Of a stretch of DNA of 49,482 nt, positions 1,310-44,065 are shown piece by piece. The position numbers and the translations under genes are program-made. The notes beneath the pieces are model-generated. The model made no database searches. It was not told where the DNA came from and saw only the letters and a program-made list of their open reading frames with translations. Source of the DNA: Macrostomum lignano (taxonomy: Eukaryota); assembly GCA_002269645.1 (NCBI GenBank), contig NIVC01004342.1, positions 1 through 49,482 on the forward strand. Reading direction: 5' to 3'. Position 1 is the stretch's first letter. Every line of letters starts with the position of its first letter.

Positions 1310-2046
1310 GCGTCCCACATTTTGCCTCGTGTGATCCTTCTTGGTGACTCACTGACCCAGTTTGGCTGGTCCAGCACCTCTGGCTGGGTTGCTCGCATAG
1401 CTGACTCCCTGGCCCGCCGCTGCGACATCGTCAACCGTGGCTTCTCGGGCTACAACAGTCGCTGGTGCAGGCTGATCGCGCCAGATCTGTTCCCAGCCGA
1501 CAGTCTGAAGACTGCAGTTGCTGCTTTTGTCATCTTCCTGGGCGCTAACGACTCGAACCGTGCCGGCAGCACCACCCAGCACCTGCCGACCGCCGACTAC
1601 GAGGCCGAGCTCGTCCGCCTCGCTGACTACCTGACTGGGCCAGCCGGGCTCAGCCGCGATGCGTTGATTTTCTGCTCCCCGCCGCCAGTTGACGGCGACG
1701 CGTGGGACCGCTGCTGCCAGGAGCGGTTCGGCACGCCCGGCACCAAGACGCTGGAAGACGTGCCGCCTTATCGAGACGCTTGCAGGCGGGCAGCCGAGGC
1801 TGCTGGCGCCACTTTCTGCAACACCTACGACGGCTTTCTGGAGCACGGGCGGACGGCGATTGGCGGGGCCTGTTCTGCGACGGGCTGCACTTTGGCCCGG
1901 CCGGGGCTGAGCGAATGTTCGACCTGCTGTGGCCGGAGATTCACAGGCGGACCGAGCGCCTGCCACAGCTGGCGCCGGAGTGGCGGACGGTCGATCCTGG
2001 CGATCTGGATGCGTCTCTTGTCAGCTTGATGAACTCTCGGGAATAA
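1310..2046 (+). CDS. IAH1: Isoamyl acetate-hydrolysing esterase 1-like SGNH/GDSL hydrolase; frameshift near 1847-1851; start unresolved
   Basis: SGNH blocks GDSL, NRGFSGYN and FLGAND are in the 1322 frame; block V DGLH and LWPEI...PEW are in the 1702..2046 frame. One extra G in the GGG at 1847-1849 joins them (EHG-A-DGDWRGLFCDGLH). Acceptor ctgcag ends at 1309; stop TAA at 2044-2046. Confidence 0.85.
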
Positions 2047-2615
2047 TTATTGGCTTTAGTGTGGGCGGTGGGAACTTTGGATTACACAGGGATATTCAAC
2101 ACAAAGAAGCCTGTGAGCAGCAGAAATATCGCGAATGATGCCTTGGGAACTCCTTCAATATGACGCATTGCATTTAAAATTCGAATGGTTGATTATAGTA
2201 AGAATATAACCAGTTTTCATGCCTCATGAGGTTTATAAAATGCTCACGTTTGCCTATAAAGCGTATAATTGAAAAAAATTAAATAAACTGTTGTAATTCT
2301 ACACATTGTGGACAGTTACGCTCGTGCACAGTTTTCAAAAGGCAGACTGTATGTACTCTTGTATTGTAGGCATGCCTAATCTAGGCCTTAAAATCAAAAT
2401 CATTACCGCATCCATCTCCACCTTCAGTTTGCTTTTAAAAGACGTTTTCAAACAAAGTTAGGAGAACTTAGTTGATTTTACTATGGTGCTTCATGCATAT
2501 ACTTCCACTCCTCCGTTTTAATGAAGATAAATCGTAGCTTGATTTTCTGCTCTGTTGCTTTTACGCCATATTAAAATATTTCACTATTCTTCCGCTTTCC
2601 AGAAAGTAGTCTCTG

Positions 2616-4685
2616 ATGGCCGATGCCGGCGACAATGTACGCGTGGTGGTGCGCTGTCGCCCCATCAATCAGAAGGAGAAGGACGCCGGCAACAAGGTGA
2701 TTGTGAAAGTTGATGAGCTGCGCGGCTCCATCGAGATCACCAATCCGGCCGGGCCGCCTAGTGAGCCACCGAAAACATTCACTTTTGACATCGTTTTCGG
2801 CATGACCTGCAAACAGGTGGACATTTATAACAAAGTGGCCAGGCCCATTGTTGATTGTGTTATTGAAGGCTACAATGGCACGATATTCGCGTATGGCCAG
2901 ACCGGAACGGGCAAGACTTTCACGATGGAAGGCGTCAGGACCGTACCTGAGCTCCGTGGCATCATCCCGAACTCGTTTGCTCACATCTTCGGCGCCATCA
3001 GCAAGGCGACAGCCAATGTGACCTTTCTTGTGCGGGTCTCGTATCTAGAGATCTACAACGAGGAGGTGCGCGACCTGCTGGGCAAGGATCAGACAGCCAG
3101 ACTAGAAGTGAAAGAGCGGCCCGATGTGGGAGTGTACGTGAAGGATCTGTGCAGCTTTGTGTGTCACAATCCGGACGAAATGGACAAGCTGATGACCGTC
3201 GGAAACAAGAATCGTGTTGTAGGAGCCACGAACATGAACGAGCATAGCTCACGTTCTCATGCAATTTACACTGTGACGGTGGAATGTTCCGAAAAAGCAG
3301 TGACTGGTAAAACGATGCTCCGACAAGGCAAGCTGCATCTTGTAGACTTGGCTGGCAGCGAGCGTCAGGCAAAGACCGGAGCCACTGGTGTGAGGCTGAA
3401 GGAAGCCACAAAGATCAACTTGTCGCTGAGTACTCTTGGCAACGTGATTTCTGCACTTGTCGATGGAAAGAGTACCCACATTCCATACCGCAACAGCAAG
3501 CTCACTCGACTTCTTCAGGACTCACTTGGAGGCAACAGCAAGACCGTAATGTGCGCCAACTTTGGTCCAGCTGACTACAACTTTGATGAAACAATCAGTA
3601 CTTTGAGATACGCAAATCGGGCGAAGAACATCAAGAACAATGCTAAGATCAATGAGGATCCTAAAGATGCAATGCTGAGACAGTTCCAGAAAGAGATTGA
3701 GGATCTGAAGAAGCAGTTGGAGGATGGTGGCGGCATTCCAGAGGGAGACGAAGATGATGAAGATGACGAGGATGATGAGGACGTCGTTGTTGGCGAAGAC
3801 GGGCAAGAACGTCGAGTTCGCAAGCGGCGCGCCCTTAAAAGCCTTTCTAAAGACCAGATGCAGGAAATCGAGCAGCGCATTGCCGCAGATCGCCGTCGAT
3901 TAGAAAAAGATCAAAACATGGCTGAAGAGGAGCGCGACCGCGTTCGCCAGCAGCTGGAATCGCAGGAGCGCGAGCTCACGCGTCACCGTCAAGAGCAGCG
4001 GGCACTTGAACAGAAGCTGTCGGACCTGGAGAAGCGTCTTATCGTTGGTGGCGAGAACCTGTTGGAGAAGGCGACTGAACAGGAGCGGCTTCTTGAACAG
4101 AATGCAAAAGAGTTGGAGGCTAGGCGCCGGGAGGAAGAGCGACTTCGAACGCAGTTAAAAGAGAAGGAGCAAGCAAAGGTCGAGATTGAAGATCGCTACC
4201 GCAGTCTGGACGAAGAAGCCACTGCTAAGACGCGGAAGCTAAAGCGTCTTTGGCAGGTGTACATGGAAGCAAAGTCTGAGCTAGCCGACGTGCAAGAAGA
4301 GCACCAGCGCGAGATGGAAGGCTTGCTAGAAAACGTGCGACAACTGAGCAGAGATCTGCGCCTGCAGATGCTCGCTATTGACCAATGCATCCCGCGCGAA
4401 TATCAGGAACTCATCGAGAGCAACGTTGTATACAATGATGCCATCGGCGAGTGGCAACTCAAGGGTGTGGCCTACTCAGGCAATAACATGCGCAAGCGAG
4501 CCGCTGAAGCGGAGGAGAAAGAGAAGAAAGAGTTGGAGGAGAAGTTTGCGGAGCCGCCGCTGGAGACGGTGTACTTGCGCTATAGTGAGCGGCTGGACAG
4601 TGCCGTGTTCAAGCCAAGCGCTCGGTCCGCCAAAGGCAAAAAGTCGGCTAAAAGTGGCGGTAGGAAAAAGAAATCTGCTGCATAA
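2616..4685 (+). CDS. KIF3A: Kinesin-2 motor subunit KIF3A-like, copy 1 (689 aa, intronless)
   Basis: P-loop GQTGTGKT, switch I NEHSSRSH, switch II DLAGSE, neck INEDPKD, acidic hinge then GED..RKRR, coiled-coil stalk with LIVGGENLL, and tail AYSGNNMRK, all typical of KIF3A. Confidence 0.95.
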
Positions 4686-5698
4686 AATTGTGGCCTTTTC
4701 TGCATGTTGAGTAACAGTTAATTTGCTGTTTTGGACATCAACAAGTCTTTATTTGTCTATCGTTCTATTGACAAGAGTTTCCTAACAATCTCAGTTTCTA
4801 ATGAAGCAATTGTTTTTTAAAGAAAAAAGTATCCCAGGTAAATTTATCAGTAATCAATGTTTCTTTAGGTCACTACTTAGTAATCTTGTTACTCTAGTCA
4901 CTGTTTTACCTGTTTTATTATGTATGCAGTGTCATGCCTGTTTCTGACTGCTTTTGTTCTCTAGGCAATTACTTGAGCTCTACTGCCTTTCTCAATGTCG
5001 GTTTGCGTCTTTTATGTCACAGATTCGTTCTATTTTTTATATTCAACTTAGTATGGTTATACAGACGTGCAATTTTTGGTTTTTCTCACAAATCTTATGA
5101 TGTTTATAATATTATCTCTAATCATTGCAATATTTGACTTTAGTATATTTTCACAGTTACCCTAAATATCTCTTCAGTAGTCTCTGAGAATCTCTGACAA
5201 CTTTAATTGCCTAGCACCTGTTTTCTTATGTCTTATTGTTTTTATTTAAATATATATACTGTAGGCTAAAAAATGATCCCTAAAGTCACAACGTCTTTAT
5301 TTATTTTAAATGTATGTGTACAATACTACTTCGAACTTTAGCTAATGCTACAGCTTTACTTTAAATTTGTTTAACTTTTTTACTTTCAGTGTTCAAATTG
5401 TAATACGCACATATACTTAAGTATGTCACTAGCTACTACGCACGTATTTTAAGTCATGGGTCAAAAGCTAACAATTTTCTTAACTCTTTGCTTTAGCCTT
5501 AGACTGTCTAGAGACGAGTCCAATTGATGCTCCGTGAAAGTAGTTCTAGAATAGTTGTTCATTAGAAACCCTGAGCTAGGGTTTCCGAGACTTCAGTTTT
5601 TCTACGAAACCATAATATTAGCGTTTGGAATAAGTAGGTTGATCTCGTTAACCTTAATTATTTTTTAAAATTTCCTTTACTTCTGCAAGAAGCTTCCA

Positions 5699-7132
5699 AT
5701 GTCGGAAGAAGAAAATAATTTTATTGTGGCGGTGAGGTGCCGGCCACTCAGTCAAAAAGAGATCACCGAAGGCAACAAGGTGACTGTGAAAATTGACGAG
5801 CTCAGAGGAACAGTTGAAATCACGGAGCCAAATGTTGTTCGCCAAGAAGGAATGGCCAGTCACGCGGGAGAGCCTAAGACATTTACATTCGATCACGTGT
5901 TCGGCATGCAGAGCAAGCAGGTGGACATTTATAACAAAGTGGCCAGACGAATTGTCGATTTCGTTTTGGAAGGCTACAATGGCACGATATTCGCGTATGG
6001 CCAGACCGGAACGGGCAAGACTTTCACGATGGAAGGTGTCAGGACCGTACCTGAGCTTCGTGGCATCATCCCGAACTCGTTTGCTCACATCTTCGGCGCC
6101 ATCAGCAAGGCGACGGCGAATGTGACCTTTCTTGTGCGAGTCTCGTATCTGGAGATCTACAACGAGGAGGTGCGCGACCTGCTGGGCAAGGATCAGACAG
6201 CCAAACTAGAAGTGAAAGAGCGGCCCGATGTGGGAGTGTACGTGAAGGATCTGTGCAGCTTTGTGTGTCCCAGTCCGGACGAAATTAACCAACTTTTAAT
6301 CGATGGCGCAAGGAATCGAATGTTTCATGCGACACGCATGGGCAGGCTAAGCTCTAGATCCAACAGGGTGTTAACAGTAACAATCGAGTGTTTAGAGCAA
6401 GGCCAAAATGGTAAAATAGTGGTGCGTCAAGGCAAACTGCATCTTGTAGTTTTTGCTGGTAGCGAGCGTCAGTCAAACGCTGGAGTCACTGGCGTGCGGC
6501 TGAAGGAGGCCTCTAAGATAGGCATGTCTATGAGTCCTTTTGGCAAAGTGATATCAGCACTCGTTGATGGGAAAAGTGTCCACATCCCTTACCGCGACAG
6601 CAAGCTCACTCGTATACTTAAGGATTCACTAGGTGGTAACAGCAAGACATTAATGTGCGCCAACTTCAGTCCAGCTGACTGTAACTATAAGGAGACTATA
6701 AGTACGTTAAGATTGGCCTGTAGAGCAAAGAGAGTCACTAATAGTGCCAAGATTAACGAGGATCCAAAAGACGCGATGCTGAGGCAGTTCCAAAAGGAGA
6801 TTGAACAGTTAAAAAGTCAACTGGAGTGTTGCGACAGAATTTCAGGCACGAACTGCGATGTTACAGACGCTGCTGCTACGAGTAAAGAAGACAGACACGG
6901 GCGTTCTGTTTGTAAGCAGCATGCGTTTAAGAGCCTCTCTAATGAGCAGATGCTGGAAATTGAGCGTCACTTCGCTGGCCGTCTCCGACCAGAACACGAT
7001 CCAAACATACCTGAACGGGAGCTTGACCAGTTTCACCATCAGTTGGTTTGGAGAAGCTCAGACTGTCTCCATTGGAGATTGTGTGCCATTCCAGCTGCAA
7101 TCAGCCAGGCAGTGCTGTTTTTAAATCCGTGA
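5699..7132 (+). CDS. Divergent, C-terminally truncated KIF3A paralog, copy 2 (477 aa; pseudo-motor or young pseudogene)
   Basis: P-loop intact. Switch I reads GRLSSRSN, switch II VFAGSE and helix 4 [12 protein letters not shown]. Stalk homology ends near ELDQFHHQL (~7045), followed by an unrelated tail. Confidence 0.8.
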
Positions 7133-8034
7133 TTCAGTTGTATTTATCCTGGGTAAAATCGCGGCGGTTTCGATATAGAAATACTGATCAACGCACTAGC
7201 GTTTTGTTTTGATAGGTTATTTTCTCTTTATTGTAGTTCGTTTTGTGTCTGTTTTTTAAAAATTACATCATTGGAAAATTGTTCACTCGATTTGTAATAC
7301 TAATATACTTTTGAGGAAGCTTCGTATCTCCAACTCACTCTGGTATTCTCTGTTTTTCTCTGCCACGATACTTTACATGTATAAGTACGATTGTTTACAA
7401 ATCTTACGCTACTGTGTTCAACTTTGGATTTAAAGCCAGCAAAATAACCATTTTAATACCTATTTTGCTTTTGAGATTATCGCAATTAAGCGATACATGT
7501 AGAATTACTTGGCTATACTTTCTAGCTTTCAGGCAATTAAGTACTATGCTATTTGTACTGATTGGCCTTCAGAACATCACAAGGATTTGAAACTGCGCCT
7601 TAAGAAGTGCTTGAAAACTTTTACTGATTCCGTATTTGATTGTTCCGAAATGTGCTTTCTGCTTTTTATCCAGCCTATCTAGTGAGGCCTAATCGAACTA
7701 TCTCATATTTTTAATGCATTTGTGAACTTTGAAGATGACAAACTCTTTTACAACAGATACTTTTTAATATTACTAGTATACAATTCATGAGTTTATATTG
7801 TAGTAAGAAAATTTACTTGCAAAAAAATTCAAATCAATAAGTTAATAATCTTCTCTATGTATAATTTTCGATTTCCGTTTGGCTAAATTTGTAAACAATG
7901 TAAAAATAGGTCATTCTGTGTATTAGGCTATTAGCATTAGAACTTTCAAACAATTTGCATTTAGAGTTTCTCCTAAACAACTATTAAAGTAGCAGCCATA
8001 TTTTACTATAAGAACGCCTTTTCTCTTTCATGCA

Positions 8035-10113
8035 ATGTCGGAAGAAAAGGAAGACAACGTCAAGGTGGTGGTGAGGTGCCGGCCACTCAGTCAAAAAGAG
8101 ATCACCGAAGGCAACAAGGTGACTGTGAAGATTGACGAGCTCAGAGGAACAGTTGAAATCACGGAGCCGAATGTTGTTCGCCAAGAAGGGATGGCCAGTC
8201 ACGTGGGAGAGCCTAAGACATTTACATTCGATCACGTGTTCGGCATGCAGAGCAAGCAGGTGGACATTTATAACAAAGTGGCCAGACGAATTGTCGATTT
8301 CGTTCTGGAAGGCTACAATGGCACGATATTCGCGTATGGCCAGACCGGAACGGGCAAGACTTTCACGATGGAAGGCGTCAGGACCGTTCCTGAGCTTCGT
8401 GGCATCATCCCGAACTCGTTTGCTCACATCTTCGGCGCCATCAGCAAGGCGACAGCCAATGTGACCTTTCTTGTGCGAGTCTCGTATCTGGAGATCTACA
8501 ACGAGGAGGTGCGCGACCTGCTGGGCAAGGATCAGACAGCCAAACTAGATGTGAAAGAGCGGCCCGATGTGGGAGTGTACGTGAAGGATCTGTGCAGCTT
8601 TGTGTGTCACAGTCCGGACGAAATGGACAAGCTGATGACCGTCGGAAACAAGAACCGTGTTGTAGGAGCCACGAACATGAACGAGCATAGCTCACGTTCT
8701 CATGCAATTTACACTGTGACTGTGGAATGTTCCGAAAAAGCAGTGACTGGTAAAACGATGCTCCGACAAGGCAAGCTGCATCTTGTAGACTTGGCTGGCA
8801 GCGAGCGTCAGGCAAAGACCGGAGCCACTGGTGTGAGACTGAAGGAAGCCACAAAGATCAACTTGTCGCTGAGTACCCTTGGCAACGTGATTTCTGCACT
8901 TGTCGATGGAAAGAGTACCCACATTCCATACCGCAACAGTAAGCTCACTCGACTTCTTCAGGACTCACTTGGAGGCAACAGCAAGACCGTAATGTGCGCC
9001 AACTTTGGTCCAGCTGACTACAATTTTGACGAAACTATGAGCACGTTACGATACGCAAATCGGGCAAAGAACATCAAGAACAATGCTAAGATCAATGAGG
9101 ATCCGAAAGACGCAATGCTGAGACAGTTCCAGAAGGAGATTGAGGATCTGAAGAAGCAGTTGGAGGATGGTGGTGGCATTCCAGAGGGAGACGAAGATGA
9201 TGAAGATGACGAGGATGATGAAGACGTTGTCGTTGGAGAAGGCAAGGAGAGGAAAAAGCGCAATCAATTCCGTGGCTTGTCTGACGAAGAGATAAAAAAA
9301 ATTGAGATTAATCTTCAGTCTGATTTGAAGAAACTCGAAAGCGACTCTCGCTTGTCAGAAAAAGAAAAGAATGACGCTCTTAAAAGACTTCAAGCGAAGC
9401 AACAGGAGCTGGACGAGCACATGAAGGATCGCCTTGCACTGCAGCGTAAGATGGAGAACCTCATGGGTCGGCTTATTGTTGGCGGTGAAAACTTGCTGGA
9501 GAAATCTGAGGCGCAGGAGAAGCTACTTGAAAAGACAAATCTGGAGCTGCAACAGCGCAAGAAGGAAGAGGAGCGACTCCGCGCTCAGCTGAAAGAGAAA
9601 GAGCAGGCCAAAGTTGAGATTGAGGATCGCTATCGCAGTCTTGGCGAAGAGGAAGAAGGAAAGACGCGTAAGCTAAAAAAGGTTTGGGAACTTTACACAA
9701 AGACGAAGGATGAGCTTGTAGAAATCAACGAGGTTCACCAACGCGAGATGGAAGGCCTGCTGGAAAATGTGCGCCAACTAAGCAAAGATCTGCGCCAGCA
9801 GTTGCTGATCATTGACCAATGCATTCCTCGGGAGTATCAGGAGCTCATTGAGCGGAACATTATTTGGAACGAATCCACAGGCGAGTGGCAGCTGAAGGGT
9901 ATAGCCTACTCAGGCAACAACATGCGCAAGCGGGCCGCCGAAGCCGAGGAGAAAGAGAAGAAGGAGATGGAAGATAAGTTTGCCGAGCTGCCGCTGGAGT
10001 CGGTGTACCTGTCATATAGCGAGCAGTTGGATCATCAGGTGTTCAAGCAGAGTGGCGGAAAATCCAAAAAGTCGAGTAAGCGTAACAAGCGCAGAGCGGC
10101 GAACCATGATTAA
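8035..10113 (+). CDS. KIF3A: Kinesin-2 motor subunit KIF3A-like, copy 3 (692 aa, intronless)
   Basis: All motor motifs intact; motor core nearly identical to copy 1; N-terminus and first coil diverged; full stalk and tail present. Confidence 0.95.
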
Positions 10114-15371: not shown

Positions 15372-16547
15372 GTGAACTCTGAACTCATCAACTTATGAAT
15401 ATGAACTCACTTATGAACTCATGAACCCAGAAACCCAGGATCAGGAACTTATGAACTCACTCATGAACTCACTCATGAACTCATGAACTCACTCATGAAC
15501 TCACTCATGAACTCACTCATGAACTCACTCATGAACTCACTCATGAACTCACTCATGAACTCACTCATGAACTCACTCATGAACTCACTCATGAACTCAC
15601 GAACTCACTCATCAACTCATGAACTCACTTATGAACTCATGAACTCACTCATGAACTCATGAACTCACTCATGAACTCATGAACTCACTCATGAACTCAT
15701 GAACTCACTCATCAACTCACTCATCAACTCATGAACTCACTCATCAACTCATGAACTCACTCATGAACTCATGAACTCATGAACTCATGAGCTCACTCAT
15801 GAACTCATGAACTCACTCATGAACTCACTCATCAACTCATGAACTCACTCATCAACTCATGAACTCACTCATGAACTCATGAACTCATGAACTCATGAAC
15901 TCACTCATCAACTCATGAACTCACTCATGAACTCATGAACTCATGAACTCACTCATGAACTCACTCATGAACTCATGAACTCACTCATGAACTCATGAAC
16001 TCACTCATGAACTCATGAACTCACTCATGAACTCATGAACTCACTCATGAACTCATGAACTCACTCATGAACTCATGAACTCACTCATGAACTCATGAAC
16101 TCACTCATGAAATCACTCATGAACTCATTGAACTCACTCATGAAATCACTCATGAACTCACTCATGAACTCATTGAACTCACTCATGAAATCACTCATGA
16201 ACTCACTCATGAACTCATGAACTCACTCATGAACTCATGAACTCACTCATGAACTCATGAACTCACTCATGAAATCACTCATGAACTCATTGAACTCACT
16301 CATGAAATCACTCATGAACACACTCATGAACTCACTCATGAACTCATTGAATTCACTCATGAAATCACTCATGAACTCACTCATGAAATCACTCATGAAC
16401 TCACTCATGAAATCACTCATGAACTCACTCATGAAATCACTCATGAACTCACTCATGAAATCACTCATTAAATCACTCATGAACTCACTCATGAACTCAC
16501 TCATTAAATCACTCATGAACTCATGAACTCATGAACTCATGAACTCA
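15372..16547. repeat. Composite satellite of 8-mer ATGAACTC and 12-mer ATGAACTCACTC
   Basis: Directly visible; variants ATCAACTC in the left-middle part and ATGAAATC in the right part. Confidence 0.97.
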
Positions 16548-18055: not shown

Positions 18056-21000
18056 ATGAGTTTCACGGACCGCGTCATCAGCCTGTGCGAGACTGCGCCA
18101 GAGGGGCGCAACGAGGAGGAGATCGAGTTCTTGGCCAGGTGGATCGAATCCAGCAGCTCGTATTTTCGGAAGCTGCGCAACAAAGGTACGCTGGTCCCTG
18201 AGTTCGGTGTTGTTGCTAGCCAATTGCGTTCTAGCGTTTGCACCTATTGAAGTGAATCTCAATGAGACAGAAGTGAATCTCAACGAGACAGAAGTGAATC
18301 TCAGTGAGACAGAAGTGAGTCTCAGTCAGACAGAAGCGAATCTCAATGAGACAGAAGTGAATCTTAATGAGACAGAAGTGATTCTCAATGAGACAGAAGT
18401 GAATCTCAATGAGACAGAAGTGAATCTCAATGAGACAGAAGTGAATCTCAATGAGACAGAAGTGAATCTCAGTGAGACAGAAGTGAATCTCAGTCAGACA
18501 GAAGCGAATCTCAATGAGACAGAAGTGAATCTTAATGACAGAAGTGAATCTCAATGAGTTGGAAACTAATGTCAATGGGAGGGAAACTAATCTCAATGAG
18601 AGGGAAACTAATCTCACTGAGAGGAAACTAATCTCACTGAGAGGAAACTAATCTCACTAAGAGGAAACTAATCTCACTAAGAGGAAACTAATCTCAGTGG
18701 GGGAGCCCACTTGTGTTTCAAGAAGTCTGAGAGTTCATGTACCGACTGTGCAGGCATTGTAAAGAAAAGAAATCAGTGCGAAAAGTTTGCATTGTCGGTT
18801 GAAATCTATCGCCATGTAGAAAAAATACAGAGAGGCTTTGGTCATGTGCCGCAACTCAATGGCGAAAGTCGACAAGCAGCCAGCCAGGAGGCAAGCAGTC
18901 ATTCCGAGTTTGCTGACCCTTTGAGCACGAACTCGGATATGTACGCAGGCACACGCTCACACAGGGTGGGTGTACGGCGGTCCTGCCTTTTTATGCGCAC
19001 TTTCAGCTAGGCATGAGTGCCCGACGTGACAAACTCCAGCTATTGCGCATCTGAAAGCTGCTTACGGCTGTTCAGTCCAAGGACTGGGGGGTCGCCACAC
19101 ACACTCCCAATTACCCCAGCTAATGCTGGCACCCATTTTACAGCTGGGTGAACTGAAGCAATGCAGAGTTGAGTGTCTTGCTCAAGGACACAATTGTTCC
19201 GAGTGGGTCAAGAATCGAACCCCCGACCTTTCAGTCGCGAGTCCGACGCTCTGACCACTAGTCTGCAACCCCTTTTGAAAAGTAACTTCAAACAAAATCG
19301 ACTGTAGCGTCCTACTTACTTCAGTTGTTTATGAATCGAACTCGGGGTCTCGAACTCAATTTCAACCTCAGATACTAGAATATGACTCGATTGGCCACTC
19401 AGGCATAAATACCTAGCAAAACAGCTTTCTACTTTCAGTTCAGTAGCAATGAAGAATACCTAAGCTATTTTATAAGAATAAAGGCAGCTGAGATGACTTT
19501 GATAAGTTCAGAAGCCCAAGCTTGCAGACGTAAACAGCTTGCTGATTGGTTCAACCATAATGTACATGATAAGCCACTGAAATGTACATGGCAGATTTAG
19601 GCTCGAACAACCGGGGAAAGTAATAAAAATTGGGTGGCGGGGCAGGGGTAGAGGTTCTGTTTGGAGTTTGAATGTTTAAAATGGGGGGTATAGCCAATAA
19701 CTCGTAAATACGCAGCCTGTAATCCTTGTCTTTAAAAATACATTAAAATGCTTCAGTTTAACTTGCTACTGAACTGAAAGTAGCTTACACGCAAATGTGT
19801 TGAGTGGCCCATCTAGTTATTCTAGCATTTGTGATTTCAACTCGTTAAAAAATCTTTCCAGACGCTATTCGAGAAATCGTTCGCGACTGCCACCTGCAGC
19901 GTTTCCATGCCAACGAGCTGATCATTCGGCAGGGCGAGAAGGGCCACAGTTTCTACCTGGTGATCACCGGACGCGTCTCCGTGTATGTCAACAGCGATGC
20001 CGAGCAGGCCTCGGAGCCTGTCACTGCTGCCGACGCCTCGGCTTCAGGCGCAGGGGGTTCCAACCAAGCGGATCGGGACCCAGAGGCGGATGCGGACGAT
20101 GCCGACGAGGATGTGGACTTGGCCTTCCTCGATGATGCTAATAAATTAGCCAGTCACGGCGAGGACGCAGAAGAGTTGCGCAGCCGCTTGCTAGGCGCTC
20201 ACGTGCTGCAGATGGGCGAGGGCTACGCATTCGGCGAGATCGCCCTCACCAGTCCTAACAGCATCCGTAAGGCGTCCGTCATCTGCGATGAGGATGTCGC
20301 AGTGCTAGTAATTCACCAGGTGTCATTTGCTAGAACTCTTAAAGCCTACCAGCTGCAGGAGTACCAGATGATCGAGAGCTTCATAGACACCTGCCCTGTG
20401 TTCGTCAACTGGCGACCGAAGCAGCGGCAGAGCCTGCGCAACAGCCTGCACAAGGAGGTGTACGGATACGGCGAGCCGATTGTGCAGCAGGGCCAGAAGA
20501 GCGGAGGCCTGTTCTTTATTGTTGGGTGAGGAAGCGAGTCCATCCACTTAATAGCTATAATATTGTAATATATGATAATTTTATGGCTGCGGGCACCTGG
20601 CGCAAAGCCTTCGGTGACATGACATCGTCCCATTTTCGAGGAGGGCGTTTCAAAATCTACAAAATTCACAAACCCGAATTACACCCGGCTTCACGTACGG
20701 CATACTCAAACTTTAAATACTCGGATATTAATTTTGAAGCATCTCCACTTAGGAACTGACAGCTGCGAGGTAGTTGAATTTCAGAGTAATCATGCCAGGT
20801 TTAGGATGCAGAAGTGTGCTTCAATAAATGGACGTGAGAAACGTGAAGTTGTCACGTGTTTCCAATGCGTGCATGGTTAGCAAGTGTAGGTATATCCTCG
20901 TATCCCAAGCATTGCTGCTGCAAGACAATGCTTGCTCCGGTTGCTTCCACCACCTCAGCTGAAATTTCCCGGCTCCCAAAAACTGCCTCTACTGTTGCTG

Positions 21001-24000
21001 ATACCTGGCTGCATGATCCCCAGTAAGGGGCGGGGGTGGTGGAGGCCGCACTGCTGACCACCCGACCATTCAGACACTGCTATGGGTTTGGGGTGAGCCT
21101 CCCAGTGCATAGAGAAAGCCTGCTCCAGTTATCATCGATCCAAGCAGGCTCAGAGGCAAGGGGTGAAAGAAAGCCAAGAGCGAGAGAGGGGAGAGAGGAA
21201 AAATAGTAGACCTGTTGAATTTTTTCGTCTACGGGGGCCTTGATAGACAACCGGTAGTTGCCATGACAATAAGTCCAAATTCAGGTGCAACTTTGCCTTC
21301 AAACTCAAGTCTCGTTAAAATATGCTTTTATGTAGGGAAACAAACGTAAAAATAAAACCGAGAAATTTGCTTCTAGGAGCGAACCAGAATAAAGCAAAGT
21401 GCTTTCATTTCCCATCTGTCAAGAGGATCCGTGAAGCTGCTCGCCGATCCAATCAGGTGGCCGGCGAGCATCCAGAAGTCAGAGAAGGACGAACAATCTT
21501 CAGCGGCGCCGGCAGCGACTCCGGCTCCGGCTGCAGCGGCCGTGCAGGCGGGACTGCTTCGACATCGTCAGGGCTACCAGGCTGCTGAGCAGAGGCAGCG
21601 CAGTCGTCAGGTCGAGATCGCCTTGCTAGGCGAGGGCGAGATTCTCGGGCAAGTGGAGCTGCTCGCAAGTTTAGGCGAGAGTCTCACAACTGCGATAAGC
21701 GTCGACAACACCTACGGCTACTGGCTGAATCGCGCCAATTGTCGCCGACTGCTGTCTCGCAACCGCGGCGCTCTGGCCCAGCTGCGCCAAACGATCCTGC
21801 TCCGTCTGCAGTCTCGTTCACGTCGGGCCCCTTTGATGCGTCGACTCGGCCAGGATCCTCGAATTGCGGGCGGTGCCGCGGCGGCAGCGGCAGTAGCCGC
21901 GGCTGCAGCCGCAGCAACCGCGGCTTCCACAGATCCCGTGGCAGCAGGCGAGGAGCAGCGCCAGCTGCAGCAGCAACAACGCCAGGCTTGGCTGATGCAC
22001 ACGCGCAAGCAGCCGCCGCCTGGCGACCTGCTCTGGCAGCACATGCTGGCCATGTACGTGGAGGGCCGCAGCCAGCTGGGTCCAGCTCCGGCCGATGCGT
22101 CGCTCTACTATCGCCACCTGTGCCGGGTGAATGCGGAGCGCAGGCGGCATCTTCGAGAGCGATCGAGGCCGGCTAAACTGGTCGCGTCGCTTCAGAACGA
22201 AGATGAGGAAGAGGCCAGGGAGTCTGAGCTGGACAGCGGGCAGCCGCAGTTGAAGATGTGGCAGCAGCAGCAGCAGCAGCGGCGGCGCACGGTCCCTAGG
22301 AGTCGCCGGCTGTTGCAACGCGAACTGGAAGCATCCGAGAAAGGAATAGTCTCGGGTCTGGGTGAGCGGCCTGATTTTGATTTCTGTTGAAAAATGGAGC
22401 TCTGAGTGGATAAAATATTTGGATAAAATTCCTGGAAGGCTGATTGATCAACAGTTAGATGCTTTAAAAATCTTTTTCGACTGGCTTTCATCGCGTAACC
22501 CGGATGGAGCAAAGACGATACACCAAATCAGCACTATTTTTTTCGCAGTTAAGTAGAACTCATACCCAACTTTGAAGGAGGAATAGCCCGCAACATTTCC
22601 TACTCTTCAAACAAAAAGAAATGTCTTCTTTGTCTCGTCTAAGATAATGGGTGAACTTGAAAAGAAACAACTGTAAAGGTATCAAAGCATCAGTGATATG
22701 CTGTTTGGCTAGCGTAGCTTGTATTTTTTGGCAATTAATTTTGGTGAAAAATCGGACGCTCAATTCCACAATTCTACAAAATTGTCTCGATTTTTGCGAG
22801 CAAGTTTTTTAACTCGGCGATATTCGAGGCCGTCGAGATATTTAACAGTTTCTTAGTAGAAACATAAAACGCAAGATTTTTTGGCATCTTTGGCTCGCAA
22901 ATATCCTGAAGGGGTGGAGAATTTTGGCAGCGAGACGTTTGCCCCGCCGACGTTTGTACACCGTAGTAGCTGAAAATTCATCTGGTCGGAGTGATTGGTG
23001 CAGCTTTTTGTACGCGTCTATCAGATGTAGCTTGTAGATTCGCTTGTACTTGTATTGTTGTGGATCCTCTTAATGCAAGTGGGAATGATTATTCGCAATT
23101 TCAGCAGGTATAGTATCGAATTTCGTCTGTCTCATGCAGTAAATAGTTTCGTTTCAAGCTTCTTTGATGATTAAATCTTTCTAGAATCGTTTGAATCTTA
23201 CACTGAGTTTAAAATTAAGAACAATTTTAAGTCGGTGTCAAACTTAAATTATTTGAATATTTATTTGCACAAAAGTGACTGTGTACTGAAAATCGCATAA
23301 AACATACAGTAAAAAATCTTCAAGAGCAAAGTATTCTCGTGTTAAGGAAGCAAATTAAGGGAAGGCTAGGCTGGGCTAAACTTGAACTATTGAAGAATAT
23401 TGTAGCTGGGAAATGTGCGGCGGGCAAACATGCGATGGGCGAACACCCAACGGGAAAGCATCCGACGGGCGAACACCCAACGGGCAAACATCCGATGGGC
23501 GAACACCCAACGGGAAAGCAATCGACGGGCGAACACCCAACGGGAAAGCATCCGACGGGCGAACACCCAACGGGAAAGCATCCGACGGGCGAACACCCAA
23601 CGGGCAAACATCCGATGGGCGAACACCCAACGGGAAAGCAATCGACGGGCGAACACCCAACGGGAAAGCATCCGACGGGCGAACACCCAACGGGAAAGCA
23701 ATCGACGGGCGAACACCCAACGGGAAAGCATCCGACGGGCGAACACCCAACGGGAAAGCATCCGACGGGCGAACACCCAACGGGAAAGCATCCGCCGGGC
23801 AAAACATCTACATTTTTTAGAGAAACAAAAAAATTAATTCCAAATTTTAAATTTTAAGATTGAATACTTGTCCTTGCCTCCACTCAGAATATCGACAGCC
23901 TGCTGCTGCTTTCGCTGCCAACGAGGCCAACAGAGCGGCCTTCCGCCCGACTGATGCTGGCAAAGGGCCTGGTGACTCAGCAGGCGCCGCCAATGCACCT

Positions 24001-24718: not shown

Positions 24719-24856
24719 ACGGCTCGGTGTCCAGAGTTGCTAACTTCAAATATTGAAAATATCGTTTTCGAATTTCTTGTTTGCAATGACACTGCTTCGC
24801 AGACGTTATTAACAGAGTCAGATAACAACTTTCGATGAAATCGCCTGCCTGCCTGC

Positions 24857-25945
<1,089 letters not shown>

Positions 25946-26521: not shown

Positions 26522-27473
26522 TATTCCCCCTGACGCTGCTCATATTCCCTGAAGTAACCCATATTCCCCTGAAGCTACCCGTAATACCCTGAAGCTACCC
26601 GTAATACCCTGAAGCTACCCTTATTCCCCTGAAGCTACCCATATTTCCCTAAAGCTACCCATATTCCACTGACACTACCCATATTACCCTGAAGCTACCC
26701 ATAGTACCCTGAAACTACCCGTATTACCCTGAAGCTATCCATATTTCCCTGAAGCTACCCGTAATACCCTGAAGCTACCCGTAATACCCTGAAGCTATCC
26801 ATATCACCCTGAAGCTACCCGTAATACCCTGAAGCTACCCGTAATACCCTAAAGCTACCCATAGTACCCTGAAGCTACCCGTAATACCCTAAAGGTACCC
26901 ATAGTACCCTGAAGCTACCCGTAATACCCTAAAGCTACCCATAGTACCCTGAAGCTACCCATATTACTCTGAAGCTACCCTTGTTACCCCAAAGCTACCC
27001 ATATTACCCTGAAGCTACCCATATTACCCCGTAGCTATCCATATTACCCTGAAGCTACCCATATTTCCCTGAAGCTACCCATATTACCCTGAAGCTACCC
27101 ATATTACCCCGTAGCTATCCATATTACCCTGAAGCTATCCATATTACCCTGAAGCTACCCATATTTCCCTGAAGCTACCCATATTACCCTGAAGCTACCC
27201 ATATTACCCCGTAGCTATCCATATTACCCTGAAGCTATCCATATTACCCTGAAGCTACCCATATTTCCCTGAAGCTACCCATATTACCCTGAAGCTACCC
27301 ATATTACCCTGAAGCTACCCATATTACCCTGAAGCTACCCATATTTCCCTGTAGCTACCCATATTACCCTGAAGCTACCCATATTACCCTGAAGCTACCC
27401 ATATTACCCTGAAGCTACCCATATTACCCTGAAGCTACCCATATTACCCTGAAGCTACCCATATTACCCTGAA
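26522..27473. repeat. 20-bp tandem repeat, ~47 units
   Basis: Consensus ATATTACCCTGAAGCTACCC; units are more degenerate at the left end. Confidence 0.97.
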
Positions 27474-28530: not shown

Positions 28531-29145
28531 ATGGCGGACAAGAAAACTGACGCTGCAAAGAAGACCAAAGAAGAGGACAGCAAGAAAATAGAGCCGCCGC
28601 CGCCAGTGCAAAAAGAGGAAGATGAAGAAGACGACGAGGACGAAGAGGACGAAGAAGAAGAAGAAGAGCAGAAAACGGACGCTAAGAAGCCCGCTGCTGA
28701 CCAGGATGCTGATGAGGACGATGAGGATGAGGAAGACGACGAAGATGAAGAAGAGAAACCGGCCGCTGCCACCGCCGCTAAAAAGGAGGAAGACGAAGAT
28801 GAAGAAGAAGATGAAGAAGATGAGGAGGATGAAGCTGAGCCAGCCAAGCCAGCGGCAGCGGCAGCTGATGACGAGGATGAGGATGAGGATGAGGATGAAG
28901 ATGATGAAGAGGAAGAAGAGAAAGCTGAGCCGGCCAAGCCAGCGGCAGCTGAGGATGATGATGAAGATGAGGATGAAGAAGATGAAGACGAAGACGAAGA
29001 AGAGCCGGCTAAGCCAGCAGCAGCAGCGGCTGAGGATGAGGACGAGGATGAAGACGAAGACGAAGACGAAGAAGAAGAAGAACAAGCGTCCGGGGTGCCA
29101 GCAAAAGTCGACGAGGAAGATGAAGACGAAGAAGAAGACGAGGAT

Positions 29146-29178
<33 letters not shown>

Positions 29179-29469
29179 AAGAAAGCGGAAGAGGATGGAG
29201 ACGAAGATGAGGACGAAGAAGAAGAGGAAGACGATGGCATGGACACACTGGACAAAATGGCGGCGGACATGAAGAAGTGGCTAGCGGAGTCCGGAGTGGA
29301 GCTGGACGCAGAGGAAACGGAGGGCATGTTGGCCGGATCCATGGACGTTGAAAAGTTCATGGAAGGCATGTCGGACGAAGACAAAGCGTTCGTAAACCAG
29401 GAGATCGAGGATATGAAGTCGATGTCGTTGCAGCAGATCATGGACCGGCTTGTGTCTGGGGCGGCGTGA
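28531..29469 (+). CDS. Hyper-acidic (Asp/Glu-rich) protein of unknown function, 312 aa, single exon
   Basis: ATG-to-TGA ORF with eight D/E blocks separated by K/P/A linkers and a non-repetitive Met-rich C-terminal ~76 aa. Mixed GAA/GAG/GAT/GAC usage is unlike a pure microsatellite. No signal peptide. Confidence 0.8.
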
Positions 29470-37461: not shown

Positions 37462-39701
37462 GCTCCACCAAAGCGCCAAGCAAAGCAGACAGCTCAGAAC
37501 AGACTGGGCATTTCAGCAGCCAATGGCGGCATTTCCAAGCCCGCTTCGTCGCCTCTAGCAGCAAAGGCTGATGTGCAAAACCGGCGACCACCATCAAGGC
37601 GACAGGCTGCGGTTCAGGCAATTGCTGCGTTGCCTGGATTGGCTAGCCAGGACCGCAGAAGGCAGTCTGCTCCGCCTGTTGCCAAGTTCTCTGCTACCAA
37701 GGATGCTGCCACCAAGAGTTCTGCCACCAAAGTTGATGCCACCAAGAGTTCTGTTACCAAGGATGCTGCCACCAAGAGTTCTGCTACCAAAGATGCTGCC
37801 ACCAAGAGTTCTGCTACCAAAGATGCTGCCACCAAGAGTTCTGCCACCAAAGTTGATGGAGTTAAAAAGGCAGCACAGGTGTCGAACAAGGCTTCAGGTG
37901 AGTGACGTGCCATAATACACATTGGGAAGAGGTGCCTAACCTACACGGGGCGGGTAGTTGCTCAGCCTACAGTAGGGGGTGGGTAGGTGGCCAGCCTACA
38001 GTAGGGAGTGGGTAGGTGGCCAGTCTACAGTAGGGAGTGTGTAGGTGGTCAGCCTACAGTAGGGGGTGGGTAGGTGCCCAGCCTACAGTAGGGGGTGAGT
38101 AGGTGGCCAGCCTACAGTAGGGGGTGGGTAGGTGCCCAGCCTACAGTAGGGGGTGGGTAGGTGCCCAGCCTACAGTAGGGAGTGGGTAGGTGGCCAGCCT
38201 ACAGTAGGCGGTGGGTAGGTGCCCAGCCTACAGTAGGGGTGGGTAGGTGCCCAGCCTACAGTAGGGGGTGGGTAGGTGCCCAGCCTACAGTAGAGAGTGG
38301 GTAGGTGGCCAGCCTACAGTAGGCGGTGGGTAGGTGGCCAGCCTACAGTAGGCGGTGGGTAGGTCCCCAGCCTACAGTAGGGGGTGGGTAGGTGGCCAGC
38401 CTACAGTAGGGAGTGTGTAGGTTGCCAGCCTACAGTAGGGAGTGTGTAGGTTGCCAGCCTACAGTAGGGGGTGGGTAGGTGCCCAGCCTACAGTAGAGGG
38501 TGGGTAGGTGCCCAGCCTACAGTAGGGGGTGAGTAGGTGGCCAGCCTACAGTAGGGGGTGGGTAGGTGCCCAGCCTACAGTAGGGGGTGGGTAGGTGCCC
38601 AGCCTACAGTAGGGGGTGGGTAGGTGCCCAGCCTACAGTAGGGAGTGTGTAGGTTGCCAGCCTACAGTAGGGAGTGTGTAGGTGGCCAGCCTACAGTAGG
38701 GAGTGGGTAGGTGGCTAGCCTACAGTAGGGAGTGGGTAGGTGGCCAGCCTACAGTAGGGAGTGGGTAGGTGGCCAGCCTACAGTAGGGGTGGGTAGGTGG
38801 CCAGCCTACAGTAGGGAGTGGGTAGGTGGCCAGCCTACAGTAGGGAGTGGGTAGGTGCCCAGCCTACAGTAGAGGGTGGGTAGGTGCCCAGCCTAAAGTA
38901 GGGGGTGGGTAGGTGGCCAGCCTACAGTAGGGGGTGGGTAGGTGCCCAGCCTACAGTAGGGGGTGGGTAGGTGGCCAGCCTACAGTAGGGGGTGGGTAGG
39001 TGCCCAGCCTACAGTAGGGGTGTGGTAGGTGCCCAGCCTACAGTAGGGGGTGGGTAGGTGGCCAGCCTACAGTAGGGAGTGGGTAGGTGGCCTACAGCCT
39101 ACAGTACAGAGGGGGGTATCGGCCCAGCCTGCAGAGCCTGACCTTCCTCCGTTTGATTTCTCAATGTTCCACAGGCGCCAAGCGGCAGCCGAGGAAGCCA
39201 GAAGCGGAAAAGAAGCAGAGCAAAATGGCGCCAAAGCAGAAAAGAAGCGGCGCCGGCGGCGGCAGCAGGAAGTCGGCAGCGCCCCGAGACCCATTCGACA
39301 TCAGCGGCCTGGATGTCGATGTCGACGAGGACGATAGTGTCGCGACCAGCGTTCGACCGAAGTCGAAAGGTCGCAAATCTTCAACAACGCCAGCTCCAGC
39401 GCCAGCATCGGCGCCAGCGACTAGCGCTGTCGGGCATTCCCAGCGCCAACTGCTGCTGTGCCACAGGCACGCCTATCAGTTTTTTACACCGGCGCGCCGG
39501 CGCCAACAGAGCGGCGCTGGCAGACAGTTGGTCAAGTCGGCTAAGGAGAACCAATCCGCCGCGTCTGGCGCCAGCGGTAGCGGCGCCGATTCTGACGTAG
39601 ACAGCGCCGAAGAGGAGGAGACCGCGCCGGCGTCGCCGCGTTTTGACCGACAACGACAGTCGGCGTCGGCAACTGCACCCGCGACGGATGCGTGGCGTTA
39701 G
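37462..39701 (+). CDS. Two 3' exons of a Lys/Ala/Ser-rich low-complexity protein (5' exon not located)
   Basis: Exon 37462-37897 (ctgcag|GCT...TCA G|gtgagt) joins exon 39175-39701 (ccacag|GC) in phase 1. Contains 10-aa repeats DAATKSSATK and RDPFDISGLDVDVDEDD; stop TAG at 39699-39701. Confidence 0.65.
37963..39105. repeat. 29-bp G-rich intronic tandem repeat, ~39 units
   Basis: Unit CAGCCTACAGTAGGG(A/G)GTGGGTAGGTG(G/C)C; period 29 (37963, 37992). Confidence 0.97.
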
Positions 39702-43670: not shown

Positions 43671-43734
43671 TGCCCATACATAAAAAAGGTGACTAAGCTC
43701 GACGAATGACAGGAGCTGACCAACTTTTGCCAAG

Positions 43735-44065
43735 GAGACAGGGCGCCTATATCTAGGAGACAGGGCGCCTATATCTAGGAGACAGGGGCGCCTATATCAA
43801 GGAGACAGGGGCGCCTATATCTAGGAGACAGGGGCGCCTATATCTAGGAGACAGGGGCGCCTATATCTAGGAGACAGGGGCACCTATATCTAGGAGACAG
43901 GGGCACCTATATCTAGGAGACAGGGGCACCCATCTAGGAGACAGGGGCGCCTATATCTAGGAGACAGGGGCGCCTATATCTAGGAGACAGGGGCGCCTAT
44001 ATCTAGGAGACAGGGGCGCCTATATCTAGGAGACAGGGGCGCCCATCTAGAAGACAGAGGCGCCA
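43735..44065. repeat. 23-bp tandem repeat, ~14 units
   Basis: Unit GAGACAGGGGCGCCTATATCTAG. Confidence 0.96.

What the first reader, a model, noticed from the sequence alone, without database searches (positions are those of the whole stretch)
5699..7132. Putative catalytically dead pseudo-kinesin with a preserved ORF
Copy 2 keeps the P-loop, the microtubule-binding L12/helix 5 ([19 protein letters not shown]) and the neck coil, with many synonymous changes. It has altered switch I (NEHSSRSH to GRLSSRSN, 6341-6364), switch II (DLAGSE to VFAGSE, 6449-6466) and the helix-4 Asn (INLSL to IGMSM, plus a Pro). That Asn appears equivalent to the residue whose substitution uncouples microtubule-stimulated ATPase in Kar3/Ncd (established). 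The distal stalk and tail needed for KIF3B/KAP3 assembly are missing. It could be a non-motile microtubule binder or regulator, analogous to Vik1/Cik1 or Smy1 (inference).
Basis: partly seen in the sequence, partly recalled or inferred. Interest (0 to 1): 0.75.

Follow-up and report, generated by a model that had tools for sequence, protein, structure and literature searches.

The report
Truncated, catalytically degenerate KIF3A-like kinesin copy
The middle of three tandem intronless KIF3A-like kinesin genes has lost its stalk and tail and the residues needed to burn ATP. The rest of its motor has still been kept by selection, so it is probably a lineage-specific non-motor kinesin, though a recently dead pseudogene is not excluded.

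Summary
The ORF at 5699-7132 (477 aa, "c2") is a KIF3A-type kinesin motor (Pfam 342 bits). It lies between two full-length paralogs, c1 (2616-4685) and c3 (8035-10113). Switch I (GRLSSRSN), switch II (VFAGSE) and helix 4 ([11 protein letters not shown]) each replace residues that are invariant in 118 KIF3A orthologs and 41 environmental kinesin-2 sequences.

- **P-loop half:** codons 1-196 are a recent gene-conversion copy of c3 (3% divergence). The intact P-loop therefore says little about selection.
- **Missing stalk and tail:** a net 577-nt, out-of-frame deletion removed them. The last 27 codons read the old tail end in the wrong frame.
- **Selection on the motor:** in codons 186-376, dN is 0.21 and dS is 1.35 (ratio 0.16). 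Constraint is strongest over helix 4 to the neck (0.095) and weakest around the nucleotide pocket (0.26). Beyond the neck the sequence is about neutral.
- **Timing:** the out-of-frame remnant is about as diverged as neutral sites, so the truncated form seems to have been maintained for a long time.

No orthologs were found, and expression and activity are untested. My reading is a probable head-plus-neck pseudo-motor (about 0.5), against a recently dead pseudogene (about 0.35). It would be a new member of a known kind, of moderate interest.

The parts
5699..7132 (+). c2: 477-codon intronless KIF3A-like ORF (the finding)
   Evidence: ORF list. Pfam kinesin motor at 342 bits. Best PDB match is the KIF3B motor 3b6u, 1.9e-123. 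Best database relatives are KIF3A orthologs at about 65% identity.
5699..6286 (+). Recent gene-conversion tract shared with c3 (8035-8625). It includes the P-loop at 5999-6022.
   Evidence: There are 19 differences in 587 nt here, against 169 in the next 557 nt. The maximum chi-square breakpoint is at c2 6286. Codons 13-185 give dS 0.069 and dN 0.005.
6341..6364 (+). Degenerate switch I: GRLSSRSN in place of [12 protein letters not shown] is kept; the invariant N215 and H222 are lost.
   Evidence: N215 and H222 are 41/41 invariant in environmental kinesin-2. This segment has the lowest nucleotide identity to c1/c3, 50-53%.
6449..6466 (+). Degenerate switch II: VFAGSE in place of DLAGSE. The Mg-water-coordinating Asp is lost; G and E are kept.
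   Evidence: D251 and L252 are 41/41 invariant.
6515..6547 (+). Start of helix 4: [11 protein letters not shown] in place of [11 protein letters not shown] (N275G, T280P, L281F, N283K)
   Evidence: N275 aligns with KIF5A N256, Kar3 N650 and Ncd N600 (PMC3000839).
6509..6826 (+). Best-conserved block of the divergent half: helix 4, L12, helix 5, helix 6, neck linker and neck coil (codons 271-376)
   Evidence: dN 0.147, dS 1.54, omega 0.095. Replacements are more conservative than random nonsynonymous mutations, p about 0.01.
6827..7046 (+). Post-neck stub, in the ancestral frame, closer to c1 than to c3. It evolves nearly neutrally and the acidic run is lost.
   Evidence: Against c1, codons 377-455 give dS 1.04, dN 0.53 and omega 0.5. 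P(no stop) is 0.045 under random placement of the observed differences. Replacements are radical. DNA homology to c1 runs up to c2 7046 = c1 3957. Nucleotide identity over 6887-7046 is 71%.
7040..7053 (+). Deletion junction CAGTTGG-TTT-GGAG. The net loss is 577 nt of the parental stalk and tail (c1 about 3958-4537), flanked by the microhomology AGYTGGA.
7050..7132 (+). Remnant of the ancestral tail end (= c1 4538-4616, c3 9972-10050), read in a shifted frame as the last 27 codons plus the stop
   Evidence: 43 of 79 ungapped matches. This is the best of all placements on the c1 tail, and 0 of 300 shuffles reach it (maximum 38). The homologous site is also the best placement in c3. Codon phase is 2 in c1 and c3 but 1 in c2 (coordinates).
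2616..4685 (+). c1: full-length 689-aa KIF3A-like paralog with canonical motifs
8035..10113 (+). c3: full-length 692-aa KIF3A-like paralog with canonical motifs. It shares the recent conversion tract with c2; the direction of transfer was not determined.

Best explanation
c2 is an old tandem duplicate of a c1-like, intronless KIF3A-type kinesin-2 gene.

**History.** Early on it lost about 193 codons of coiled-coil stalk and conserved tail through a microhomology-flanked deletion. The net loss is 577 nt, so the remaining tail end is out of frame. Since then it has persisted as a gene for a motor head plus neck linker and neck coil, followed by an unconstrained extension of about 100 aa. Much later, gene conversion from c3 rewrote codons 1-196, including the P-loop.

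**Selection.** Selection has kept the frame open. It has conserved helix 4 through L12, helix 5, helix 6 and the neck. Constraint on the nucleotide-pocket elements collapsed.

**Predicted protein (inferred, not shown).**
- It folds as a kinesin head and may still bind nucleotide.
- It cannot perform normal microtubule-stimulated ATP hydrolysis or stepping.
- It cannot join the KIF3/KAP heterotrimer.
- It would therefore act, if at all, as a monomeric non-motile microtubule-binding or competing factor, possibly on ciliary microtubules.
For: **Shown**
- Kinesin motor homology and KIF3A affinity.
- Loss of invariant catalytic residues.
- In the unconverted motor half, pN is 0.18 and pS is 0.63, giving dN 0.21, dS 1.35 and omega 0.16.
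- Randomly placing the observed differences predicts 99 +/- 4.5 amino-acid changes; 60 are seen. The same simulation gives P(no stop) = 0.012.
- Constraint forms a gradient: omega 0.26 for codons 186-270, 0.095 for 271-376, and 0.5 beyond the neck.
- Replacements in 271-376 are conservative (p about 0.01) but not in 186-270 or in the stub.
- Polarised with outgroups, 43 changes fall on the c2 lineage and 4 on c1/c3.
- Gene conversion cannot mimic omega below 1, because it erases synonymous and nonsynonymous differences alike.
- The flanking intergenic DNA of the three copies is unalignable, so a copy that was never constrained would not be recognisable.

**Order of events (inferred)**
- The out-of-frame remnant differs from c1 at 46% of sites (JC d about 0.7). 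c1 and c3, an older pair, differ at only 23% there.
- The remnant has therefore decayed neutrally for about as long as the motor half has been diverging under constraint.

**Suggestive of ongoing constraint**
- Within the recent conversion tract, the c2-specific changes are 3-4 synonymous and 0 nonsynonymous.
Against: - An out-of-frame 577-nt deletion and 36 replaced invariant sites are what a decaying pseudogene looks like.
- Protein evolution on the c2 lineage is about 10-fold faster than in c1/c3.
- GC3 has dropped from about 0.57 to 0.48.
- Helix 4, central to microtubule binding, carries a Pro and other radical changes.
- No ortholog was found in any collection.
- No expression data exist, and no promoter or poly(A) signal distinguishes c2.
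- The timing argument rests on 79 nt and a molecular-clock assumption.
- The mosaic of conversion tracts of different ages makes every dS estimate local and noisy.
- Structure prediction was uninformative.
Confidence: 0.5

Rival explanations
1. c2 is now a non-functional pseudogene. It served for a long time as a diverging, possibly redundant KIF3A paralog. It has since died, and the remaining signal of constraint is historical. Gene conversion from c3 keeps part of it looking intact.
For: - Out-of-frame 577-nt deletion of the stalk and tail, with a frameshifted C-terminus.
- Loss of catalytic invariants.
- Near-neutral evolution beyond the neck (omega 0.5, radical replacements).
- A documented conversion tract that restores the N-terminal half.
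- Lower GC3.
Against: - There is no stop or frameshift in the 270 unconverted in-frame codons.
- By my own estimate (about 4.5% of substitutions creating stops, plus indels), any neutral phase must be no more than about 0.03 substitutions per site.
- That is too short to produce most of the roughly 150 nonsynonymous differences, so the catalytic losses must mostly predate death.
- The remnant's divergence suggests the deletion is old, not the recent killing event.
- c2-specific changes in the young conversion tract are all synonymous.
Confidence: 0.35
2. c2 is still an active, if unusual, ATPase or motor head. The motif changes are tolerated or compensated, with SSRS, G254, E256 and the P-loop retained.
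For: - P-loop, RCRP, SSR, GxE, L12/helix 5 and the neck linker are intact.
- Purifying selection acts on the motor.
Against: - The switch II Asp, the switch I Asn and His, and the helix-4 Asn are invariant in every kinesin-2 sampled (159 sequences).
- Substitution of the helix-4 Asn alone abolishes microtubule activation or processive motility in Kar3, Ncd and KIF5A (PMC3000839).
- A monomeric head without a stalk cannot walk processively (established kinesin mechanism).
Confidence: 0.05
3. The divergent half of c2 did not evolve in place. It was copied by gene conversion from a fourth, unseen paralog elsewhere in the genome, into what is otherwise a dead locus.
For: - The cluster is demonstrably mosaic, with tracts of different ages and donors: 5' like c3, stub like c1.
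- Nucleotide identity to c1/c3 varies sharply, from 50-53% at 6296-6416 to 70-80% at 6417-6826.
Against: - No fourth copy exists in the 49-kb window (tblastn).
- The idea only moves the degenerate but constrained sequence to another locus, so it does not remove the pseudo-kinesin.
Confidence: 0.07

Closest known systems
KIF3A (kinesin-2 heterotrimeric motor subunit); nearest solved structure is the KIF3B motor domain, PDB 3b6u
   Same: Motor domain, neck linker and neck coil are clearly KIF3A-type. Identity to KIF3A orthologs is 57-66% over the motor, and the flanking c1/c3 are full-length KIF3A-like genes.
   Different: c2 lacks the coiled-coil stalk and tail and the acidic post-neck run. It has non-canonical switch I, switch II and helix 4. 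It is intronless and lies in a tandem triplet.
Non-motor kinesins of the kinesin-11 type (KIF26A/B, Smy1p, VAB-8)
   Same: These are kinesin-fold proteins retained by selection although they lack motor activity (KIF26A: PMC10585591; Smy1p: PMC2141741, both listed). That is the functional class proposed for c2.
   Different: They are ancient, long, multi-domain proteins of a different subfamily. c2 is a young, lineage-specific, truncated KIF3A derivative, and its N-terminal half is still canonical because of gene conversion.
Vik1/Cik1, non-catalytic motor-homology partners of Kar3
   Same: A non-catalytic kinesin-like head that could bind microtubules without hydrolysis (PMC4338441 and PMC3384419, listed).
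   Different: Vik1/Cik1 lack a nucleotide site altogether and work through a long coiled coil that pairs them with Kar3. c2 keeps a P-loop but has lost the stalk needed for stable dimerisation.
Rigor and uncoupling point mutants: Kar3 N650K, Ncd N600K, KIF5A N256S
   Same: c2 N275G is at the homologous Asn at the start of helix 4 (alignment).
   Different: Those are single laboratory or disease substitutions in otherwise intact dimeric motors. c2 combines this change with losses in switch I and II and with truncation, and the replacement is Gly rather than Lys or Ser.
Unprocessed (duplicated) pseudogene kept similar by gene conversion
   Same: Tandem copy, large out-of-frame deletion, and a conversion tract from a functional neighbour.
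   Different: pN is far below pS, and there is no stop or frameshift across 455 homologous codons.

Membership tests
Kinesin superfamily (motor-domain fold) | Significant full-length match to the kinesin motor-domain profile PF00225 | tested here: met
   342 bits, E 3.9e-102, profile positions 1-327 of 327. 162 PDB kinesin chains match.
Catalytically competent kinesin motor | P-loop GxxxxGK(T/S) | tested here: met
   GQTGTGKT at residues 101-108. It lies inside the recent conversion tract from c3.
Catalytically competent kinesin motor | Switch I NxxSSRSH | tested here: not met
   GRLSSRSN: N215G and H222N at positions that are 41/41 invariant.
Catalytically competent kinesin motor | Switch II DxxGxE | tested here: not met
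   VFAGSE: D251V at a position that is 41/41 invariant and at least 98% conserved in 118 KIF3A orthologs.
Catalytically competent kinesin motor | Microtubule-stimulated ATPase and motility | not testable with these tools
   This needs a recombinant protein assay.
Kinesin-2 / KIF3A subunit of the heterotrimeric motor | Closest relatives are KIF3A orthologs; KIF3A-type neck | tested here: met
   The top hits, after two artefactual double-motor entries, are all KIF3A. The neck has 26 of 29 residues identical to c3.
Kinesin-2 / KIF3A subunit of the heterotrimeric motor | Coiled-coil stalk and C-terminal tail for KIF3B pairing and KAP3 binding | tested here: not met
   A net 577 nt is deleted (c1 about 3958-4537) and the tail end is out of frame.
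Non-motor kinesin / pseudo-enzyme (functional class: KIF26, Smy1, Vik1/Cik1) | Catalytic residues lost while the coding sequence stays under purifying selection | tested here: met
   omega is 0.16 over codons 186-376 and 0.095 over 271-376, with no stops, while invariant catalytic residues are replaced. This shows selection over the history of the lineage, not necessarily today.
Non-motor kinesin / pseudo-enzyme (functional class: KIF26, Smy1, Vik1/Cik1) | Expressed protein with a demonstrable non-motor role | not testable with these tools
   No transcript, proteome or ortholog data were reachable.
Pseudogene | Disabling lesion relative to the parent gene | tested here: met
   Out-of-frame internal deletion, with the last 27 codons frameshifted.
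Pseudogene | Neutral evolution (omega about 1) and accumulation of stops and frameshifts across the former coding sequence | tested here: not met
   This fails for the motor and neck: omega is 0.16 and there are no stops or frameshifts in 455 codons. It is approximately met only for the post-neck stub (omega 0.5) and the tail remnant.

The most novel reading that the evidence does not exclude
A head-only, ATPase-dead derivative of the ciliary transport motor KIF3A has been kept by selection for a long time. Its canonical N-terminal half is periodically rewritten by gene conversion from a working neighbour. It would act as a monomeric microtubule-binding brake or competitor that tunes kinesin-2 traffic, for example in cilia or sperm flagella. 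This would be a pseudo-enzyme born from a deletion that would normally be scored as a pseudogene lesion.
Probability: 0.25. Interest if true: 0.6.

Novelty: new member of a known kind. Interest (0 to 1): 0.4.

Why it matters
Non-catalytic kinesin-like proteins are known (KIF26A/B, Smy1p, Vik1/Cik1, Cos2). To my knowledge none derives from the intraflagellar-transport motor KIF3A, and none is a bare head plus neck. If c2 is expressed, it would be a natural experiment on what a rigor-like or hydrolysis-dead kinesin-2 head does in vivo. It would also show how a pseudo-enzyme can arise from a lesion that annotation pipelines call a pseudogene.

The locus is also a clean example of mosaic gene conversion in a small tandem family. 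It is a caution that 'conserved motifs' in a paralog can be conversion artefacts rather than evidence of selection. If c2 is simply a dying copy, the finding is ordinary.

Tried and rejected
  - The 5.8-billion-protein search found nothing closer than about 65% (generic KIF3A). The two top scores were artefacts of duplicated motor domains.
  - Exact-sequence look-ups of c2 and c3 found nothing on record.
  - The metagenome scan's best hit was 66%.
  - No per-branch dN/dS against orthologs was therefore possible. The source organism could not be named, and its KIF3A is closest to spiralian and vertebrate orthologs at 63-68%.
- **Structure prediction.** AlphaFold2 on c2 with a 25-sequence alignment gave mean pLDDT 44.7. 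The control with canonical c3 and the same alignment also left the motor (residues 93-357) below 50. The result is limited by the method and says nothing about c2.
- **Stringent local DNA alignment (+2/-3).** It missed the tail remnant (score 19; 80 of 500 shuffles reached it). tblastn was also only marginal (E 0.49 and 0.96). An ungapped match count with shuffles showed the remnant is real.
- **Regulatory signals.** There is no shared upstream k-mer motif and no AATAAA or ATTAAA within 500 nt downstream of any of the three copies. This does not discriminate.
- **Other searches.** Rfam and tRNA scans of the window found nothing.
- **Readings rejected.**
  - The antisense ORFs opposite the 5' ends of all three motors (for example 5654-6088) are by-products of codon composition, not genes.
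  - A micro-intron cannot restore the old frame at the junction. The only GT..AG there spans 12 nt.
  - The divergent half is not KIF3B-like. Its derived residues match no kinesin-2 subfamily sampled.

Full report
**What is in the sequence**

The first 10 kb of the window carry three same-strand, uninterrupted ORFs that encode KIF3A-type kinesin-2 proteins:
- c1, 2616-4685, 689 aa
- c2, 5699-7132, 477 aa (the finding)
- c3, 8035-10113, 692 aa

All three match the Pfam kinesin motor profile end to end, at 402, 342 and 399 bits. The nearest solved structure to c2 is the human KIF3B motor 3b6u (1.9e-123). The nearest database proteins are KIF3A orthologs from across Bilateria at about 57-66% identity. 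The two highest-scoring hits were artefacts, being gene models with a duplicated motor. c1 and c3 span the whole length of KIF3A without interruption, so the genes are intronless.

- 6341-6364 reads GRLSSRSN, where c1/c3 read NEHSSRSH.
- 6449-6466 reads VFAGSE, where c1/c3 read DLAGSE.
- Residues 273-283 read [11 protein letters not shown], where c1/c3 read [11 protein letters not shown].

I compared c2 with 118 KIF3A orthologs over codons 186-376. c2 replaces 36 of 142 sites that are at least 98% conserved; c1 and c3 jointly replace 3. With the orthologs as outgroup, 43 changes fall on the c2 lineage and 4 on the c1/c3 lineage.

I also extracted 41 much more diverse kinesin-2 sequences from environmental contigs (50-66% identity). 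In these, N215, H222, D251, L252, N275, L278 and L281 are invariant in 41 of 41, and N283 in 38 of 41. c2 has changed every one.

N275 is the homolog of KIF5A N256, Kar3 N650 and Ncd N600. Substitution of that residue prevents microtubule activation of the ATPase or processive motility (PMC3000839, read).

**c2 is a mosaic, which changes how the 'kept' motifs should be read**

A codon-by-codon comparison and a maximum chi-square breakpoint scan give four segments:
- **c2 5699-6286.** It differs from c3 8035-8625 at 19 of 587 sites, while the next 557 sites differ at 169. Codons 13-185 have dS 0.069. This is a recent gene-conversion tract and it contains the P-loop, so the intact GQTGTGKT is a copy of c3's, not evidence that c2 has preserved it.
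- **About 6296-6416 (around switch I).** Only 50-53% identical to c1/c3.
- **6417-6826.** 70-80% identical to c1/c3.
- **The post-neck stub.** Closer to c1 than to c3.

c1 and c3 are themselves old paralogs with saturated synonymous divergence in the tails. Their motor cores are homogenised over c1 2809-3785 = c3 8252-9228, at about 97-98% identity.

**How the stalk and tail were lost**

In-frame homology between c2 and c1 runs to c2 7046 = c1 3957. The 79 nt at c2 7050-7128 find their best ungapped placement on the whole c1 tail at its very end, 4538-4616. That placement has 43 of 79 matches, and none of 300 shuffles exceeded 38. The best placement on c3 is the homologous site, 9972-10050 (alignment).

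The codon phase there is 2 in c1 and c3 but 1 in c2. The last 27 codons of the c2 ORF therefore read the ancestral tail end out of frame. The net loss is 577 nt.

The junction (CAGTTGG-TTT-GGAG) sits in a microhomology, AGYTGGA, present at both c1 break points. One reading is a 579-nt in-frame deletion followed by an A-to-TTT change. A micro-intron cannot restore the frame.

**Is the ORF preserved beyond chance?**

For the motor and neck, yes:

| Region (c2 codons) | dN | dS | omega | Replacements vs random nonsynonymous mutation |
|---|---|---|---|---|
| 186-376 (whole unconverted motor half) | 0.21 | 1.35 | 0.16 | more conservative, p = 0.012 |
| 186-270 (switch I to switch II) | 0.30 | 1.18 | 0.26 | no more conservative than random |
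| 271-376 (helix 4 to neck coil) | 0.147 | 1.54 | 0.095 | more conservative, p about 0.01 |
| 377-455 (post-neck stub, vs c1) | 0.53 | 1.04 | 0.5 | radical |

- Over codons 186-376 there are 78.5 synonymous differences in 125 sites and 82.5 nonsynonymous in 448.
- Placing the 161 observed differences at random predicts 99 +/- 4.5 amino-acid changes, against 60 observed (0 of 5000 simulations as low). An open frame results in only 1.2% of trials.
- Nearly all amino-acid change is on the c2 lineage. A clock split of dS therefore gives a c2-lineage omega near 0.3. This figure is an inference.
- In the stub, an open frame is only marginally unlikely (P 0.045).
- Gene conversion cannot produce omega below 1, because it removes both kinds of difference together.
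- The intergenic flanks of the three copies are unalignable. An unconstrained copy of this age would be unrecognisable.

**Order of events (inference)**

The out-of-frame remnant differs from c1 at 46% of sites (JC distance about 0.7). The older pair c1-c3 differ at only 23% in the same segment. The remnant has therefore drifted for roughly as long as the motor half has been diverging under constraint. That implies the truncated form was maintained by selection after the stalk was lost.

If c2 is dead now, the neutral phase must be short. I estimate no more than about 0.03 substitutions per site, from the absence of any stop or frameshift in 270 unconverted codons. That is too short to account for most of the catalytic-site replacements.

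Within the young conversion tract, c2-specific changes that can be polarised are 3-4 synonymous and 0 nonsynonymous. This suggests constraint continues, but the counts are small.

**Most likely mechanism**

Shown:
- a KIF3A-derived head plus neck;
- loss of the hydrolysis and coupling invariants;
- loss of the stalk and tail;
- purifying selection concentrated on helix 4 through the neck.

Inferred: the product is a monomeric kinesin head that may bind nucleotide but cannot carry out microtubule-activated hydrolysis or stepping, and cannot enter the KIF3/KAP complex. If functional, it would be a static microtubule binder or a competitor of kinesin-2.

Weak points:
- Helix 4 itself carries T280P, L281F and N283K, so microtubule affinity is uncertain.
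- Nothing is known about expression.
- No orthologs could be found.
- Structure prediction was uninformative. c2 had mean pLDDT 44.7, and the canonical c3 control also left the motor below 50 with the same shallow alignment.

**Comparison with what is known**

By descent c2 is a kinesin-2/KIF3A family member. It fails the features that define a working KIF3A subunit: switch I, switch II, stalk and tail.

Functionally it resembles the known non-motor kinesins. [quoted passage not shown] It belongs to none of those families. Unlike Vik1/Cik1, it has no coiled coil to pair with a partner. It also meets one pseudogene criterion (a disabling lesion) and fails another (neutral evolution of the motor).

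**Verdict**

Confidence is about 0.5 for a selectively maintained pseudo-motor, about 0.35 for a recently dead pseudogene, and small for an active enzyme or an imported segment. The finding is a new member of a known kind, with interest 0.4.

Noticed in passing
window 2809-3785 and 8252-9228: c1 and c3 are old KIF3A-like paralogs: their tails are 44-88% identical at nucleotide level and synonymous sites are saturated. Their motor cores are about 97-98% identical over roughly 976 nt with sharp breakpoints. This is a second, independent gene-conversion tract in the cluster.
   Followed up: partly
window 2616-4685, 5699-7132, 8035-10113: All three kinesin-2 genes are intronless, which is unusual for metazoan KIF3A. 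This suggests a retrogene origin followed by tandem duplication, or an intron-poor genome. The source organism could not be identified, and no relative closer than about 68% exists in the protein collection.
   Followed up: partly
window 1322-2046 (+): This is an IAH1-like GDSL esterase (Pfam Lipase_GDSL_2; PDB 3mil, isoamyl acetate-hydrolyzing esterase). Its reading frame switches near 1846-1860. The C-terminal DGLHF motif lies in the second frame and there is no room for an intron. It is either a frameshifted gene or an indel error in the assembly.
   Followed up: partly
window 7040-7053; c1 3950-3958 and 4530-4538: The c2 deletion junction lies in a 7-8 nt microhomology (AGYTGGA) present at both parental break points. 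This is consistent with slippage or microhomology-mediated deletion.
   Followed up: yes
window 2571-2984, 5654-6088, 7984-8427 (-): Homologous antisense ORFs of 137-147 aa lie opposite the 5' end of each kinesin gene. They are most likely a by-product of codon composition, not genes.
   Followed up: no
window 15447-16547, 23421-23800, 24845-25945, 26528-27473, 37947-39106, 43733-44064, 44597-45153, 47584-48301: The window has an unusually high density of long minisatellite and microsatellite arrays. Examples are (CTGT)x275, a 20-mer x47, a 29-mer x40 and a 30-mer x24. They generate long spurious ORFs in several frames.
   Followed up: no
window 19960-20529 and 21431-22390 (+): The first of these long ORFs has a cyclic-nucleotide-binding domain (PF00027, 28.6 bits). 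The second is low-complexity and rich in Ala and Gln. They are possibly exons of one gene.
   Followed up: no
window 28531-29469 (+): A 312-aa ORF encodes an extremely acidic (Asp/Glu-rich) repetitive protein with a non-repetitive C-terminal segment. It has no Pfam match.
   Followed up: no
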